A stretch of DNA of 40,119 bases from Perkinsus chesapeaki ATCC PRA-425 (lineage: Eukaryota > Protista > Perkinsozoa): the NCBI GenBank assembly GCA_013115145.1, contig JAAPAO010000318.1:1-40119 (forward strand). Direction: 5' to 3'. Below, piece after piece: positions 253 through 5,500 of this stretch (positions within the stretch are counted from its first letter, which is position 1; each line of letters begins with the position of its first letter). The notes beneath the pieces are model-generated. The model was not told where the DNA came from, did no database searches, and saw only the letters and a program-made list of their open reading frames with translations. The position numbers and the translations under genes were made by a program.

Positions 253-2306
253 ATGGCCACCAACTCCGCTGTAGAGGACCAAATCCTGGCCATGGTCAGT
301 GTAGCCGATAAGAGGGTTCGTGCCATGGATGAGGTAATATGAGTCCTCCGATCATCAAACGATGATGCCTGTAGGCGGCTGCTCAAGCTGATTTCGACAG
401 TGCCCCGACTCCGAGACTGTGGAGCAAGGACAGTAGGGAGGGGTGAAACCATTCGACCTCTATTAGTATCTTTTTAGTGCCGCACATGAAGCTCGGTGCC
501 ACGGTTGCTGTTGGCTCTACTCCCGAAGATAAGCTCACTGAAGAGTACCCTTTTGTCTCATAAACATTGCCTACTATATTCCATCAGGTATTTTGCCGGT
601 CTTCTCAGTGGTGGTGCCTCGATGATAGTTCTCGACATCTCCAAAGGTGTTTTCACCGAGGGCGGTAGGAAGCCCTTCCTGGCTCTATATATCTATTCTG
701 ATTAGTTGACCCCCAGGCCCTTGTTGACAAGCTCAACATGTGCGTTCAGAAAATTAGTAAGCCGAATGCTTTCTGAAGGCAGTGCGGTTATTGCCTTTTG
801 TAGGAGCTGCCGGAAAGGGCACCGGAATGAACCGTCCCTTCTCCCTCGCTCTAGCGGTCGCCAACAACGAACTAGCTAAACTCTGCGTCACGAAGGTTGC
901 CATCCCTCGAGGGATCGGTGCTGTTATTATTCCACCTGTCCGTACTGGTGCTGAAGTTACAGCATTCAGGAGCTCAGTTTTGGGCATGCGTGGAAGAAGG
1001 ATTAAGATATATGTAAATGCCGGTGTTTCGGAAAGTTTAATTACTGCTCCAGGTGCACACCACTACCACCAAGAACATTGAGGACTTCCTTCCTACTGTG
1101 GACGGAATCGTAACACCTACAAATCTTCATCAGTATTACTATGCTTAGGTTGTCCCTCCTTCGACCGTGAATTACCGCAGTGTTTGCGCCTGTGCCAATA
1201 TGGCTGGGAAGCTGGTAGGCTATCGGCGTCCTTGTATGGGCCTAGTAGGTGTTTTCAGGTTTTCACGGATTGCACAGGCTCTCCTGTTGGTAATCTCATG
1301 GCGGCTGTTTCTGTACAGAGTGATACTGCTTTGGTAGGTCAGGTTGTGAGTTGTGGGAAATTTGGTATTATTTCAGTTAACGGATGATAAATCATCTCAT
1401 GCAGCAGCCGCCACCCATACATTAGAGGAACAGGTGAGCACTCCGCTGCTAATAGCCGTTTTGAAGGAAATAATATTATCAATGGAAAGCTCATCAATGG
1501 ACTCTAAGAGAAGCTCGATGTTGAAATTGTTGTAGGCGGCCACGGCAGGCGTAACCTTCTCTGGACCTGTGAGAACCAATACGGTGGTTGGTGCAGTGGT
1601 TGAAAAGGCCATAGCTATGCAGGCCGATGACAGTAACAACGCAAAGCTCATCGTGGTAGGACTGCTCTAGATGACAAGTGTGCCGCTGGTTCCTCTACTT
1701 AGGCATTTTCGGATGATGGGGCGAGTGCGGCCTCTTTGTCAAGGATGAGACCTTCATGCAAGGTGAGGAGTTTCCTCATTTCTGCCCGCTTAAGCTATCG
1801 ATACGCACTGGGCTGCCTTAGTTGGCCTCTTTCGGCTCACGTTGCTTTTTTCTGTATATAGTGGGATATTCATACTTTTCCAGCTAACACTCCAGTCTTC
1901 CTGCGTGATAATCCACCCTAGAGTCGGTGGCCGACATGTACCAATACTTGCTCGTTGGTCAGATTTTGGCGATGTCCGCCTCGGAGGCGATAATAAACCT
2001 CTTTACCACTCTTTGGGGCGTTGAGCCTCTCCAGACAGCAAGGTACCATCCTTGTGTCCTCCAAGGCCCCCCTATAGCACTTAATGTAGTTACCAGTCGG
2101 CCGAGGCGGTGATACAGAACGTAAAGGACTTCTGTAAGGAGACTGGGCTTGCTGCTTCGGGTAGGGTACCAGTGCTTAGCCTGCCCTTAGTGTTCTTGAC
2201 AGGTACCTATATTGTTGTCGTTCGCCCGATCCCATCGACGGCCACATTCGACGAGATTGAGGACTTGGACGTATTTGTTGACCTCGTGGAGGTAGGGAGG
2301 TTTTAA
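253..2306 (+). CDS. Pyruvate kinase-fold protein, divergent, B domain absent, probably catalytically inactive (~15 exons, ~400 aa)
   Basis: Manual splicing gives one open frame: MATNSAVEDQ...KLGATVAVGSTPEDKLTEEYFAGLLSGGASMIVLDISKG...RPFSLALAVANNELAK...RGIGAVIIPPVRTGAEVTAFRSSVLGMRGRRIKIY|VHTTTTKNIEDFLPTVDGI|VVPPST...CACANMAGKL|VFTD...NAKLIV|AFSDDGASAASLSRMRPSCK|ILAMSASEAIINLFTTLWGVEPL...VIQNVKDFCKETGLAASG|TYIVVV. These blocks are colinear with the pyruvate kinase A barrel and C domain. Stop may be 2326 if a last 29-nt intron is used. Confidence 0.75.
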
Positions 2307-2554
2307 AGAAATTAGATTAGGTTTGACGGCGGAAATTAGGTATGATTTTAAAGAAGTAGTTCGCCGGCCTCGGGCCGCATACATTTTTTTGTGTAAACAG
2401 TTGGCAGTTACTCAGTAGATGCTCATGAGCCTGGAGAGAAATGGTTATGAGGTTTTTCATAAGCTTGCGGTCTCGCCAACGTGCCTTGAGTTCTAGTGCT
2501 AAGCTCGAGATTTCCTTGGCCATCACAGTAAAGAGCTGAATAGGATTTTCTATA

Positions 2555-5500
2555 ATGCTCCCAAGGACAAGAGCTCTCACTCATCTGCTCGGCCAGACCA
2601 AAGCTCTCCCAGCTGCAACGGCGGCGGGTTCGAGGATGATATGTCAACGACGAAATAATTCTTCCTTCATTAGACAGGTGAGAAAGGCAAAGGGATAGGG
2701 AGGTGAGGGGTAATGGTGCAGGTTATGGAACAAGTGCGGCGAGAGGCTGAGAACGATCCTAAATTAAAGAAGGCATTTGAGGAGGTCGAAAAGACAGCAT
2801 CTCGGGTAGTACTATTGGGGAATATCTGTGTGGTGTGGATGTGGCTGGTACAGGTGACAGAGACTAATGAACAGCTACGAGCGAAGGCTGAGGCGCAAGA
2901 GGCTAAGTTGGCGGCGATGCGAGATAAAATGCAAAGTGCTAAGTAATGCGGGAATCGTTGGTGGAGCAGAGGGGTGATGGATTGTGTGATAGAGATCGAA
3001 CTAAGAGCCTTTATGAGGAGTTACGAAAACATATGCCTGAAGGCGGCCCGGTTGGTGGTGATACAGCGAACAGTGCGTCCACTGCAGCACGTAAGAGGGC
3101 GGTGGTTGGGCAGGACCGGTAGGGAAGTGTTAAAGTGGATTTGGGACTGTTGGGGAATGGAATGCATTGGAGGTTTTACACGCGTTAAAACCCTTCGATG
3201 TTGTACCACATGGGTCTAGGAACACTTCAGGGCTCTTGACGAACACGTACGCATGCGGTTGGATGAATAGTTGGCTGTATGGTTTTGTCGGGAGGCATTT
3301 CGCTACATCGAGCACATTATTTGGGTATGTTAGATGGGAATGTGATAGTTGATAATGTTATTTATAAGGAATAGGTGGGAATGTGATGGTTTAATAATGT
3401 TATTTATAGGGAATAGGTGGGAATGTGATAGTTGATAATGTTATTTATAGGGAATAGGTGGGAATGTGATAGTTGATAATGTTATTTATAGGGAATAGGT
3501 GGGAATGNNNNNNNNNNNNNNNNNNNNNNNNNNNNNNNNNNNNNNNNNNNNNNNNNNNNNNNNNNNNNNNNNNNNNNNNNNNNNNNNNNNNNNNNNNNNN
3601 NNNNNNNTGATAGTTTAATAATGTTATTTATAGGGTATAGGTGGGAATGNNNNNNNNNNNNNNNNNNNNNNNNNNNNNNNNNNNNNNNNNNNNNNNNNNN
3701 NNNNNNNNNNNNNNNNNNNNNNNNNNNNNNNNNNNNNNNNNNNNNNNATTTATAGGGAATAGGTGGGAATGTGATAGTTTAATAATGTTATTTATAGGGA
3801 ATAGGTGGGAATGTGATAGTTTAATAATGTTATTTATAGGGAATAGGTGGGAATGTGATAGTTTAATAATGTTATTTATAGGGACACCGGAGTGGATGAA
3901 GCCTGTTTTGGAGCAGTTGTCGATAGTTAGTAGCAAGGCGCGGGAGGCCACTTCGACGGTGAGGATTCATCACGGTTTATCTTGCGTATTTGTGTTGGTG
4001 TAGTTTGTGGACAAGGCAAGTGGATTTACAAAAATGATGGATAAGGAGAGCTCGCAAGGTGTAGAAGAAAGACTTAAAGAATTCCAGCGAACACAGGCGG
4101 TAGGCAAATTCTTGCGCGCCCTCTAATTCGCTGCTTATGCTTAGGCCATGAGAGATTTAGAGAAGGAGAAGGAGCTTCGTGAGAAGGCTGCTGTGGATCC
4201 CACGGTATGCTTTGTCTGCCCTGGAGGGTCGTTGTTTCGCATCACATTATCCATTATTTCTCACTCAGCCATTTTCATTCGTTTCGCACTGCGGAGCCGA
4301 TTCTGGACTTGGCAAATTTCCGAACGAAGATTTCGGAAATTTTAGATTTCTTCAAATTCCACGTGTGGAGATGATGAACTTGCATTTTTTGTGTTGACAG
4401 GCGCAGCCCGTGCCCGAGAATCCTCATGGGTCAGCTTTGGTGGTGTCGGACAGGGCACAGTCTACTTGGGAGAGATTTGGCTTTACATCCAGCGAAGACT
4501 CGAAGTTCTTGGGAGGCTTCTTTGAGAATCCTATGGTTGACAGGTAGGCAGTCGGCGGCGAGTATGTAGAGTAAAGGGAAGGCTTGCAGGATTTTTGGGG
4601 AGACAGAGGTTGCACAATCCATACGGGAGATGAAGGAAATCGACCCCAACTTCCGGCTTTCCCAGATGGCAGAGGATATTGAACACGTTGTGGCGCCAAG
4701 GATAATAAGCTGGTATCTCGAGGTGATAAGGCGGGGTGGAGTCGGTGCTATATGCGATTAGTGCTGTGTGATGGGGCCCTTGTTTCCAGTATTGTTGATC
4801 TGTCTCTAATTCGAAAGATGAATGTAAACCTAGGCAGGTGCACGGTGTGGCATTTATATTCGGCATCTCCTAATTTCCTCTGTTGGAGAGTGTAATTAGT
4901 TTTTATAATAATTTTCTTCACTCGAGCACCACCAAAACATACCCGCGAGTATAGAGCATGATTATTGGGATACAGTAGCAAGTCTCAGTCGGCCGGTTTT
5001 AGGGTGACGTTGAGCGGCTAGAGGCCCATTGTGGAGAGGCTGCCTTCGCTGCGGTAAACGCATCGGTGAAGGCACGGCATACACAGAAGTTGACACTGGA
5101 TACCAATATACTGCAGGTGGGAGCTTGAGTAACTATACGGTGATGAGATTATTGGTAGGGGCCGGTCGATGTTGAATTGAAGGGAGCCAAGACGGCTTCT
5201 GAAGTCGATTCTCCTTGTTTTATCTTTACCTTCTCAACACAGCAAGTGAATTGCCTTCGGAATGAGTTCGGTAAGTTTGGCGGATCGAAGAGGTCAGAGA
5301 GGTATATTGTAGGTGAGGTAGTAGAAGGAGCTGTGGATGACATTAGAAGGGTCTTCTATGCGATGGCTGTACAGAAGCATCCTGAGCCTGATACACCGGT
5401 AAGGAGGGGCCACATTCCTATCCGTTCTTTGCTATTCGTTCTCTATTTAAATCCGATTGGCTTACTGAAGGTGTGGATTTGCCTGTTTTATTTCGTAAGG

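What the first reader, a model, noticed from the sequence alone, without database searches (positions are those of the whole stretch)
253..2306. Lid-less, catalytically dead pyruvate kinase paralogue (candidate regulatory subunit or metabolite sensor)
Seen: about 15 exons splice into one open ~400-aa frame that no ORF in the track reveals. Established: pyruvate kinases need R/N/H of ARLNFSHG, DTKGPEIR, K270/E272 of SKIE, D296 of ARGDLG and a ~100-aa B domain (human PKM numbering). Here the aligned segments read MIVLDISKG, AVANNELAK, KIYVHT and VVPPST. Only ~15 residues separate the DTKGPEIR-equivalent from the GVD(FIFASF)-equivalent (RGIGAVIIPPVR), so the B domain is deleted. The C domain, which carries the allosteric effector site and tetramer interface (AFSDDGASAASLSRMRP..TLWGVEP), is the best preserved part. 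Inference: an intact frame with retained interface surfaces suggests a selected pseudoenzyme, possibly a hetero-oligomeric PK regulator or sugar-phosphate sensor, not a decaying pseudogene.
Basis: partly seen in the sequence, partly recalled or inferred. Interest (0 to 1): 0.78.

Follow-up and report, generated by a model that had tools for sequence, protein, structure and literature searches.

The report
Lid-less, inactive pyruvate kinase paralogue
The oyster/clam parasite Perkinsus chesapeaki expresses a conserved 407-residue relative of the glycolytic enzyme pyruvate kinase that has lost its lid domain and its catalytic residues, so it is very probably a selected non-catalytic "pseudoenzyme" whose role is still unknown.

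Summary
Spliced RNA contigs support all 15 introns of a 16-exon gene (window 253-2345, + strand) that encodes 407 aa.

- **Organism and distribution:** the genome is Perkinsus chesapeaki. I found collinear orthologues only in P. olseni and P. marinus.
- **Homology to pyruvate kinase (PK):** the P. olseni orthologue P0006 has the same 407 aa and aligns exon for exon without gaps. It hits Pfam PK_C at 70.9 bits. All 53 PDB sequence hits are PKs. hhalign against alveolate PKs gives probability 99.2%, E 1.3e-19. An AlphaFold model aligns to PK structures at Z 22.
- **What is missing:** Pfam's barrel profile PF00224 does not hit. The B (lid) domain is absent inside one continuous, RNA-covered exon. 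K270, E272 and D296 are replaced by His, Thr and Thr (PKM numbering). R73, D113, T114 and K115 also appear replaced, but that part of the alignment is weak.
- **Selection:** against P. olseni, amino-acid identity is 81%, pN is 0.117 and pS is 0.75 (saturated). This is strong purifying selection, not decay.
- **Function:** regulator, sensor or new enzyme remains untested.
- **Left out:** the window's joined protein was not sent to any search. I used exon references and P0006 instead.
- **Literature:** I found no paper describing such a protein.

The parts
253..333 (+). Exon 1, start codon ATG at 253, residues 1-27. N-terminal extension, predicted helical at low confidence.
   Evidence: An in-frame stop lies 3 codons upstream. 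The loose end at 373 carries the end of exon 1. Collinear with the P. olseni orthologue P0006, residues 1-27.
375..432 (+). Exon 2, residues 28-47.
   Evidence: Joint 432->478 with GT..AG ends. Maps to P0006 residues 30-46.
478..544 (+). Exon 3. Barrel strand beta1 equivalent (MKLGATVAVG).
   Evidence: Joints. The AF2 model has a strand at 53-57. VIA alignments to PK structures start at model residue 43-50, against residue 2 of E. coli PykF.
588..664 (+). Exon 4. Alpha1 and beta2 equivalents. MIVLDISKG takes the place of the PK motif (V)ARxNFSHG: R73->V (628-630), N75->D (634-636), S77 kept (640-642), H78->K (643-645).
   Evidence: Joints 544->588 and 664->706. The best local hhalign match of the N-terminal part falls here but is not significant (E 0.12). 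The AF2 model has a strand at 81-85.
706..756 (+). Exon 5. Alpha2 equivalent.
   Evidence: Joints. 15 of 16 residues identical to P. olseni.
804..1012 (+). Exon 6 (69 in-frame codons). Covers beta3, the site of the missing B domain (codons 854-871: A129 V130 A131 N132 N133 E134), alpha3, beta4 (AVIIPPVR), alpha4 and the start of beta5 (RRIKIY).
   Evidence: An RNA contig covers 804-1012 with 0 differences. Smith-Waterman z 7.2 against the genome's own PK, residues 250-284. HMMER aligns NNELAKL...GIGAVII to SEKDK...GCNFIAASF of P. falciparum PK. hhalign probability 99.2% from residue 139 onward.
1053..1109 (+). Exon 7. End of beta5, the former catalytic loop, alpha5 and beta6. K270->H183 (1056-1058); E272->T185 (1062-1064), or a gap in the hhalign alignment.
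   Evidence: Joints 1012->1053 and 1109->1149. Alignments. 19 of 19 residues identical to P. olseni, with 0 non-synonymous and 11 synonymous differences.
1149..1214 (+). Exon 8. VVPPST replaces (I)ARGDL: D296->T206 (1164-1166), or the loop is deleted in the hhalign alignment. ANMAGKL corresponds to CNLAGKP.
   Evidence: (aligns to PK 318-339).
1259..1333 (+). Exon 9. Beta7 (VFTDC) with T328->C227 (1271-1273). Shortened alpha7 and beta8 equivalents.
   Evidence: The loose end at 1333 carries the start of exon 10. hhalign. pLDDT is about 30 from residue 227.
1377..1433 (+). Exon 10. End of beta8 (LTDD corresponds to LSGE; S362->T in the window, P in P. olseni) and an alpha8 remnant.
   Evidence: Low model confidence. 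This is the least conserved part, 12 of 19 identical.
1536..1655 (+). Exon 11. Linker and start of the C domain (first helix and strand).
   Evidence: Joints 1433->1536 and 1655->1703. The PK_C profile covers P0006 residues 292-388.
1703..1762 (+). Exon 12. C-domain loop SDDGAS (1709-1726) in place of the phosphate-binding TETGTT loop of canonical PK, followed by LSRMRP, which corresponds to LAKYRP.
   Evidence: Smith-Waterman z 5.1 against PK 451-468. Alignments.
1763..1962 (+). Intron 12, 200 nt, the longest in the gene. It is not a hidden exon.
   Evidence: Joint 1762->1963 with GT..AG ends in an RNA contig. By my reading of the exon positions, the corresponding intron in P. olseni is only about 43 nt (L017 5771-5813).
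1963..2042 (+). Exon 13, C domain.
   Evidence: Smith-Waterman z 4.2 against PK 471-494. Joints.
2090..2160 (+). Exon 14, C domain.
   Evidence: 23 of 23 residues identical to P. olseni. Joints.
2203..2291 (+). Exon 15. Last C-domain strands, with an acidic loop five residues longer (FDEIEDLD) where canonical PKs have the PGSSN effector loop. The C-terminal strand is kept.
   Evidence: Alignment. Joints 2160->2203 and 2291->2340.
2340..2468 (+). Exon 16. Last codon GTA, stop TGA (2343-2345) and 3' UTR to at least 2468.
   Evidence: RNA contig X1 record 3 covers 2338-2468, joined to exon 15.

Best explanation
The locus is an expressed 16-exon gene for a 407-aa protein descended from the alveolate cytosolic pyruvate kinase (PK).

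**Shown:**
- It keeps the (beta/alpha)8 A-domain barrel and the C-terminal alpha/beta (PK_C) domain in their usual order.
- The roughly 100-residue B (lid) domain, which in PKs closes over the active site and helps hold the nucleotide, has been excised cleanly between beta3 and alpha3.
- The residues that bind PEP, Mg2+ and K+ are replaced.
- The gene is maintained by strong purifying selection in at least three Perkinsus species.

**Inferred, high confidence:** it cannot carry out the PK reaction, so it is a pseudoenzyme with respect to PK.

**Inferred, lower confidence (about one in three):** it acts non-catalytically through the surfaces it has kept. These are the C domain (effector pocket and C-C dimer strand) and a remodelled but highly conserved barrel face. 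The mode I consider most likely is to bind a small phosphorylated or acidic metabolite, to join canonical PK subunits, or both, and so tune glycolytic flux. Trypanosomatid 'prozymes' tune their active paralogues in this way.
For: - **Gene model and expression:** spliced contigs from two runs support all 15 introns.
- **Organism:** Perkinsus chesapeaki. The genome's canonical PK is 100% identical to a P. chesapeaki protein.
- **Homology, exon by exon:** pieces E6, E8, E12, E13 and E14 align collinearly to the genome's own PK at 250-284, 318-339, 451-468, 471-494 and 498-517.
- **Homology, via the orthologue:** P. olseni P0006 matches every window exon without gaps. It gives PK_C 70.9 bits against a cut-off of 28. 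All 53 PDB sequence hits are PKs, the best being P. falciparum PK at E 7e-15. hhalign against 36 PKs gives probability 99.2% and E 1.3e-19 over 236 columns.
- **Fold:** the AF2 model has mean pLDDT 73. Residues 52-135 are confident (74-93) although no PK rows covered them. VIA-align gives Z 22.4, 293 residues aligned, model 43-407 against T. gondii PK 36-510. Foldseek's top hits are all PKs.
- **Lid and catalytic residues:**, plus the sequence itself.
- **Selection:** over 398 codons against P. olseni, amino-acid identity is 81%, pN 0.117 and pS 0.75. Exons 7 and 14 have no amino-acid change but 11 and 12 synonymous differences. A second transcript in the same runs differs at 23 sites, and all 18 sites listed for the runs lie at third codon positions.
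- **Divergence pattern:** a very long stem branch followed by short branches within the family.
Against: - Pfam's PK barrel profile PF00224 hits neither the window exons nor the full-length orthologues, even at E<=10.
- The first 138 residues have no significant sequence similarity to PK, so the R73, N75, D113, T114 and K115 assignments rest on a weak alignment and a predicted fold.
- Residues 227-280 (alpha7, beta8 and alpha8 equivalents) are about 21 residues shorter than in PK and modelled at pLDDT about 30. Barrel closure and the A-A interface are therefore uncertain.
- The model of the C-terminal two thirds used PK fragments in its alignment, so it is not independent of the homology claim.
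- No activity, binding or partner data exist.
- Asp85, His183, Asp226 and the Asp-Asp pair at 250-251 are conserved and are predicted to sit at strand ends. They could form a new active or metal site, in which case the protein would be dead only for PK chemistry.
Confidence: 0.8

Rival explanations
1. Stand-alone sensor or scaffold. The protein does not touch canonical PK. It forms its own oligomers or binds other partners, and uses the C-domain pocket or the barrel face to bind a metabolite.
For: - The region that forms the A-A interface in PK tetramers (alpha6 to alpha8) is the most shrunken and least conserved part.
- The effector loops are remodelled: SDDG replaces TETG, and an acidic loop five residues longer replaces PGSSN.
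- The very long stem branch argues for a shift away from the ancestral partnership.
Against: The C-terminal strand and the C-domain core that make the C-C contact in PKs are kept. No ligand or partner has been identified.
Confidence: 0.3
2. Neo-enzyme. The barrel has been rebuilt for a different reaction that needs no lid or nucleotide, as in other members of the PEP/pyruvate-binding barrel superfamily.
For: - The former active-site loops are the most conserved part of the family. Exon 7 (HTTTTKNIEDFLPTVDGI) is 19/19 identical between species, and AVIIPPVRTGAE is the same in every family sequence that covers it.
- Polar residues D85, H183, D226 and D250/D251 are conserved at predicted strand C-termini.
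Against: - The geometry could not be inspected, because no coordinates are returned.
- There is no match to any other enzyme family in Pfam or the PDB; all hits are PKs.
- Both canonical metal ligands are gone.
Confidence: 0.15
3. Decaying pseudogene or annotation noise. The frame is open by chance and the transcripts are non-functional.
For: - The PF00224 profile gives no hit.
- Public gene models for the orthologues are fragmentary or fused to the neighbouring gene.
Against: - Fifteen in-frame exons are spliced exactly.
- The 407-aa frame is collinear and gap-free in P. olseni.
- pN is 0.117 against a saturated pS of 0.75.
- The differences listed for the second transcript are all at third codon positions.
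Confidence: 0.03

Closest known systems
Canonical alveolate cytosolic pyruvate kinase (P. chesapeaki P0009; P. falciparum PK PDB 7z4r/3khd; T. gondii PyK1 PDB 3eoe)
   Same: The A-domain barrel and C domain are in the same order. About 31% identity over 236 profile columns. Best sequence and fold matches. The protein ends on the same C-terminal strand.
   Different: No B domain. K270, E272, D296, T328 and (by the weak alignment) R73, D113, T114 and K115 are replaced. The alpha6-alpha8 region is about 21 residues shorter. The effector loops are altered. It has 15 introns, whereas this genome's canonical PK genes are intron-less tandem copies.
Engineered human liver PK with the B domain deleted (PDB 7qdn)
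   Same: The architecture is A+C without the lid. It appears among the Foldseek matches (E 4.4e-15). This shows that a PK can fold without its B domain.
   Different: That protein is a laboratory construct with intact A-domain catalytic residues. The Perkinsus protein is a natural gene that has also lost those residues.
Trypanosomatid 'prozymes': catalytically dead paralogues of AdoMetDC and deoxyhypusine synthase that activate the live enzyme in a hetero-oligomer (PMC3663545)
   Same: In both cases a protist parasite keeps a conserved dead paralogue of an oligomeric metabolic enzyme. This is the working analogy for the mechanism.
   Different: The enzyme families are unrelated. Hetero-oligomer formation is demonstrated there and untested here.
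Database entries 'Pyruvate kinase C-terminal domain-containing protein' (P. marinus PMAR020572 and PMAR009967) and the mis-named 'TIM44' entry of P. olseni (P0006)
   Same: These are the same family, 56-81% identical, with the PK_C domain flagged automatically.
   Different: The entries are uncharacterised and partly mis-modelled or fused to the neighbouring gene. The degenerate barrel, the missing lid and the lost catalytic residues are not annotated.

Membership tests
Pyruvate kinase (EC 2.7.1.40; Pfam PF00224 + PF02887) | C-terminal alpha/beta domain matching PF02887 (PK_C) | tested here: met
   Orthologue P0006 scores 70.9 bits (cut-off 28) at residues 292-388; P0005 scores 62.4 and P0003 67.5. 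Window exons 11-15 map onto that region without gaps at 65-100% identity. The window's short exons alone do not reach the profile.
Pyruvate kinase (EC 2.7.1.40; Pfam PF00224 + PF02887) | Barrel domain matching PF00224 (PK) | tested here: not met
   No PF00224 hit at E<=10 for P0005 or P0006, nor at the window locus in the own-genome search. Homology of beta4-beta8 is seen only with phmmer and hhalign.
Pyruvate kinase (EC 2.7.1.40; Pfam PF00224 + PF02887) | B (lid) domain of about 100 residues inserted between beta3 and alpha3 | tested here: not met
   LALAV-ANN-ELAKL is continuous within exon 6, and an RNA contig covers 804-1012. hhalign and HMMER align NNELAKL directly to the post-lid SEKDK helix. 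The P. olseni and P. marinus sequences read the same way.
Pyruvate kinase (EC 2.7.1.40; Pfam PF00224 + PF02887) | Catalytic and metal residues K270, E272, D296 and T328 (PKM numbering) | tested here: not met
   His183, Thr185 (or a gap), Thr206 (or a gap) and Cys227. These positions are invariant in all 36 canonical PKs aligned.
Pyruvate kinase (EC 2.7.1.40; Pfam PF00224 + PF02887) | PEP and K+ site residues R73, N75, S77, D113 and T114 | tested here: inconclusive
   The best local alignment gives V83, D85, S87, A129 and V130, but with E 0.12. The placement is supported only by the order of secondary-structure elements and the fold alignment.
Pyruvate kinase (EC 2.7.1.40; Pfam PF00224 + PF02887) | PK-type A+C three-dimensional fold | tested here: met
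   AF2 model of P0006 with pLDDT 73. VIA Z 20-22 to more than 50 PK entries, with 280-300 residues aligned. Caveats: it is a predicted model, PK fragments were in its alignment for residues 135-407, and residues 227-280 are unreliable.
Pyruvate kinase (EC 2.7.1.40; Pfam PF00224 + PF02887) | Catalyses PEP + ADP -> pyruvate + ATP | not testable with these tools
   This needs an enzyme assay of the recombinant protein.
Pseudoenzyme (conserved, catalytically deficient homologue of an enzyme) | Homology to an enzyme family, loss of catalytic motifs and evidence of selection | tested here: met
   Homology. Lost motifs. pN 0.117 against pS 0.75, and expression.
Prozyme-type regulatory paralogue | Physical association with, and modulation of, the active paralogue | not testable with these tools
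   Complex prediction on the C domains of P. olseni PK and P0006 returned NOT FOLDED. No experimental data exist.

The most novel reading that the evidence does not exclude
Perkinsus regulates glycolysis with a dedicated, lid-less dead pyruvate kinase subunit. This subunit co-assembles with the canonical enzyme through the retained C-C (and perhaps A-A) interfaces, or senses a metabolite on its behalf. That would be a prozyme-like layer of PK control not described in any organism.
Probability: 0.25. Interest if true: 0.8.

Novelty: new variant of a known kind. Interest (0 to 1): 0.55.

Why it matters
Pyruvate kinase is among the most studied allosteric enzymes. I found no description of a natural, conserved PK homologue that has lost both its lid and its catalytic residues in four full-text literature searches.

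If the protein regulates PK or senses a glycolytic intermediate, it would add a new mode of control at the last step of glycolysis. It would also be a lineage-specific handle in a commercially important group of bivalve parasites.

It is also a natural experiment. It shows that the PK A+C scaffold tolerates clean excision of the B domain, as the engineered human construct 7qdn does.

On the practical side, it shows that public Perkinsus annotations of this gene are fragmentary, fused to the neighbouring TIM44 gene, or mis-named.

Tried and rejected
- **Pfam on ten single exons:** nothing useful, because the pieces are too short.
- **Own-genome scans with PF00224 and PF02887:** only the canonical PK arrays were found, nothing at the window.
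- **phmmer of exons 6 and 11 against the PDB:** no hits.
- **AF2 with only the five family sequences:** pLDDT 46, unusable.
- **MAFFT of the family with full-length PKs:** it mis-aligned the N-terminal third onto the B domain.
- **MAFFT with separate N-terminal PK fragments:** it scattered the fragments. I discarded both alignments and used PK fragments from alpha3 onward only.
- **hhalign of residues 1-140 against the PK N-terminal part:** E 0.12 local, nothing in global mode. Sequence homology of that part is not shown.
- **Phylogeny:** the family sits on a stem of about 10 substitutions per site, so its point of origin among alveolate PKs cannot be read.
- **Complex prediction, P. olseni PK C domain with P0006 C domain:** This is no evidence either way.
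- **ESM Atlas feature search of residues 40-200:** the best hit is a PK barrel cluster at 0.82, which is below the level that counts as more than a lead.
- **Search for relatives outside Perkinsus:** I found none with an exhaustive phmmer of exon 6 (the two other hits are unrelated repeat proteins) or with two word-indexed searches.
- **Hidden B-domain exon in intron 1763-1962:** rejected.
- I used exon references and the collinear orthologue P0006 instead.
Full report
**1. What is in the sequence**

The window is contig C2383 of a 41.7-Mb eukaryotic assembly. The genome's canonical pyruvate kinase (PK) is 100% identical to a Perkinsus chesapeaki protein, so I take the organism to be P. chesapeaki, as earlier notes of the scan also say.

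Two small public runs hold contigs of this locus from which GT..AG introns have been removed, so they derive from RNA. Thirteen junctions are listed directly, and two more follow from loose ends at 373 and 1333.

The gene model is:
- exons 253-333, 375-432, 478-544, 588-664, 706-756, 804-1012, 1053-1109, 1149-1214, 1259-1333, 1377-1433, 1536-1655, 1703-1762, 1963-2042, 2090-2160 and 2203-2291;
- a last exon from 2340 with one codon and the TGA stop (2343-2345);
- a 3' UTR to at least 2468.

That makes 16 exons and 407 codons. Only the 3' end (2306) was off.

**2. How the protein was examined**

I searched exon by exon.

An exhaustive phmmer of exon 6 (69 aa) against 1.84 billion representatives found only two related proteins, both from Perkinsus marinus. 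Word-indexed searches then gave the full-length P. olseni orthologue P0006 (407 aa), P. marinus P0005 and P0003, and fragments.

Every window exon maps onto P0006 without a gap and in order. P0006 numbering is therefore also the numbering of the window protein, and I used P0006 as its proxy.

**3. It is a pyruvate kinase relative**

- **Exon by exon.** Independent local alignments of exons 6, 8, 12, 13 and 14 to this genome's own PK fall at residues 250-284, 318-339, 451-468, 471-494 and 498-517. They are strictly collinear. The three strongest have z-scores of 7.2, 5.1 and 4.2, and 0 of 200 shuffles reach their scores.
- **Own genome.** In the six-frame search of the assembly, the only match to exon 6 besides itself lies inside a canonical PK gene.
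- **Pfam.** P0006 hits PK_C (PF02887) with 70.9 bits against a cut-off of 28.
- **PDB by sequence.** All 53 hits are pyruvate kinases, led by P. falciparum and T. gondii enzymes at E about 1e-14. There are two stretches, one in the barrel (134-257) and one in the C domain (293-386).
- **Profile-profile.** Comparison with 36 alveolate PKs gives probability 99.2% and E 1.3e-19 over 236 columns, from alpha3 of the barrel to the C terminus.

Pfam's barrel profile PF00224 does not hit at all. The first 138 residues show no significant sequence similarity.

**4. Fold**

With only five family sequences AlphaFold failed (pLDDT 46).

I then supplied an alignment in which PK fragments cover only residues about 135-407 and nothing but family members covers the N-terminal third. 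The model reached pLDDT 73:
- a confident alternation beta1 (53-57), alpha1, beta2 (81-85), alpha2, beta3 (125-129), alpha3, beta4, alpha4, beta5, alpha5, beta6, alpha6, beta7 (222-225);
- an unreliable stretch at 227-280;
- a C domain at about 90.

The N-terminal strands were therefore built without PK information and still complete a PK-like barrel.

Foldseek's top matches are all PKs, including an engineered human liver PK with the B domain deleted, 7qdn. VIA-align gives Z 20-22 with 280-300 aligned residues. Model residues 43-407 match, for example, residues 2-470 of E. coli PykF.

Caveats: this is a predicted model, it is partly conditioned on PK sequences, and no coordinates were available for inspection.

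**5. What is missing**

*The lid.* The beta3-equivalent LALAV (A129, V130 and A131 stand where PKs have D113, T114 and K115) runs through two Asn residues into ELAKL. HMMER aligns ELAKL to the SEKDK helix that follows the lid in canonical PKs. The roughly 100-residue B domain is therefore absent.

This junction lies inside exon 6, which an RNA contig covers end to end with no difference. No alternative exon can supply a lid there.

*Catalytic positions* (invariant in all 36 canonical PKs):

| PKM position | Residue here | Basis |
|---|---|---|
| K270 | His183 | |
| E272 | Thr185, or a gap | |
| D296 | Thr206, or a deleted loop | |
| T328 | Cys227 | |
| S362 | Thr in the window, Pro in P. olseni | |
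| R73 | Val83 | weak N-terminal alignment |
| N75 | Asp85 | weak N-terminal alignment |
| H78 | Lys88 | weak N-terminal alignment |

The alpha6-alpha8 region is about 21 residues shorter than in PK.

PK chemistry needs the lid, the Mg2+ ligands and K270 (established enzymology of the family). Loss of PK activity is therefore a strong inference, but it has not been measured.

**6. It is maintained by selection**

The P. olseni gene (locus L017) has the same 15 coding exons. I summed differences exon by exon over 398 codons:
- amino-acid identity is 81%;
- pN is 0.117;
- pS is 0.75, i.e. synonymous sites are saturated, so dN/dS is far below 1.

For comparison, the canonical PKs of the two species are 87% identical.

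Non-synonymous divergence by region:

| Region | Exons | pN |
|---|---|---|
| Barrel core | 6-9 | about 0.08 |
| C domain | 12-15 | about 0.08 |
| N-terminal part | 1-5 | 0.14 |
| Linker | 10-11 | 0.21 |

Exons 7 and 14 have no amino-acid change but 11 and 12 synonymous differences.

In the same RNA runs a second transcript differs at 23 of about 200 positions, and all 18 differences listed for the runs fall on third codon positions. The assembly holds only one locus, so this variant is an unassembled paralogue, a diverged haplotype or another strain.

A tree shows a very long stem and short branches within the family. This is the pattern of a burst of change followed by constraint. The origin within alveolate PKs cannot be resolved.

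**7. How it probably works**

Shown: a PK-derived A+C scaffold, no lid, no canonical catalytic residues, expressed and constrained.

Inferred: it acts non-catalytically. Two kept features suggest how.
- **The C domain.** In PKs it carries the effector pocket and the C-C dimer contact. Here its core and its C-terminal strand are kept. The phosphate-binding loop reads SDDG[AT][ST] instead of TETGxT. The second effector loop is five residues longer and acidic (FDE[IL][ED]DLD instead of PGSSN). The pocket is altered rather than simply preserved.
- **The former active-site face.** This is the most conserved part within the family: AVIIPPVRTGAE, the stretch around HTT[TS]TKNI, and TDC. Asp85, His183, Asp226 and Asp250/251 sit at predicted strand ends. 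Something constrains this face.

I therefore rank the roles as follows:
- regulator or sensor linked to PK or glycolysis, about one in three for a direct mixed oligomer or ligand-dependent action on PK;
- a stand-alone binding protein, about 0.3;
- a new lid-independent activity, about 0.15.

Decay is essentially excluded.

**8. Comparison with what is known, and novelty**

The closest relatives are the canonical alveolate PKs. The closest architecture is the laboratory B-domain deletion of human PKL (7qdn). The closest concept is the trypanosomatid prozyme (PMC3663545).

Databases already hold the P. marinus and P. olseni sequences. They appear as hypothetical or 'PK C-terminal domain-containing' proteins, and one carries the wrong name 'TIM44'. 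The sequences are therefore not new.

Four full-text searches found no description of a natural lid-less, catalytically dead PK. A fifth, on Perkinsus and pyruvate kinase, found no paper about the PKs of Perkinsus itself. The library does not cover most subscription journals.

I found no relative outside Perkinsus, within the sensitivity of a 69-aa exhaustive search and two word-indexed searches.

I class it as a new variant of a known kind. It fails the membership test for a functional PK (barrel profile, lid and catalytic residues not met) and meets the sequence-based definition of a pseudoenzyme.

**9. Verdict**

Interest is moderate to good (0.55): it is a clean, well-supported and apparently undescribed pseudoenzyme of a textbook enzyme, restricted to one parasite genus, with mechanism untested.

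Noticed in passing
window 2555-2942 (and L017 6545-10311): The downstream same-strand gene is a TIM44/DnaJ-type gene. Its likely true first exon is 2555-2677, a 41-aa Arg-rich segment with no acidic residues that looks like a presequence. It is followed by a GT donor at 2678 and an acceptor AG at 2720-2721. Public models P0007 (P. olseni) and P0129 (P. marinus, PF02887+PF04280) instead fuse the PK-like gene to TIM44, and P0006 carries the name 'TIM44'. The RNA contig joins 2291 to 2340 and stops at TGA, so the two are separate mRNAs less than 90 nt apart.
   Followed up: partly
window 812-1014 (runs X1 and X2): A second transcript variant of the PK-like gene is about 11% diverged, and every difference listed lies at a third codon position. 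It also has a different exon-6 start. No second locus exists in the assembly. It could be an unassembled paralogue, a diverged haplotype or another strain.
   Followed up: partly
window 1432-1579: One RNA contig (X1, depth 22.5) carries a non-canonical joint with GG..CA ends that skips 146 nt, i.e. intron 10 plus the first 43 nt of exon 11. It may be an assembly chimera or belong to the variant transcript. Unexplained.
   Followed up: no
window 3331-3884: A 41/42-nt tandem repeat (4.3 and 3.3 copies, 94-100% matches) lies on either side of two runs of N (3508-3607 and 3650-3747).
   Followed up: no
G000 contigs C126, C475 and C609 (loci L001-L014): The canonical PK genes of this genome are intron-less and lie in tandem arrays (at least three copies on C126 and two on C475). 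This contrasts with the 15-intron PK-like gene.
   Followed up: no
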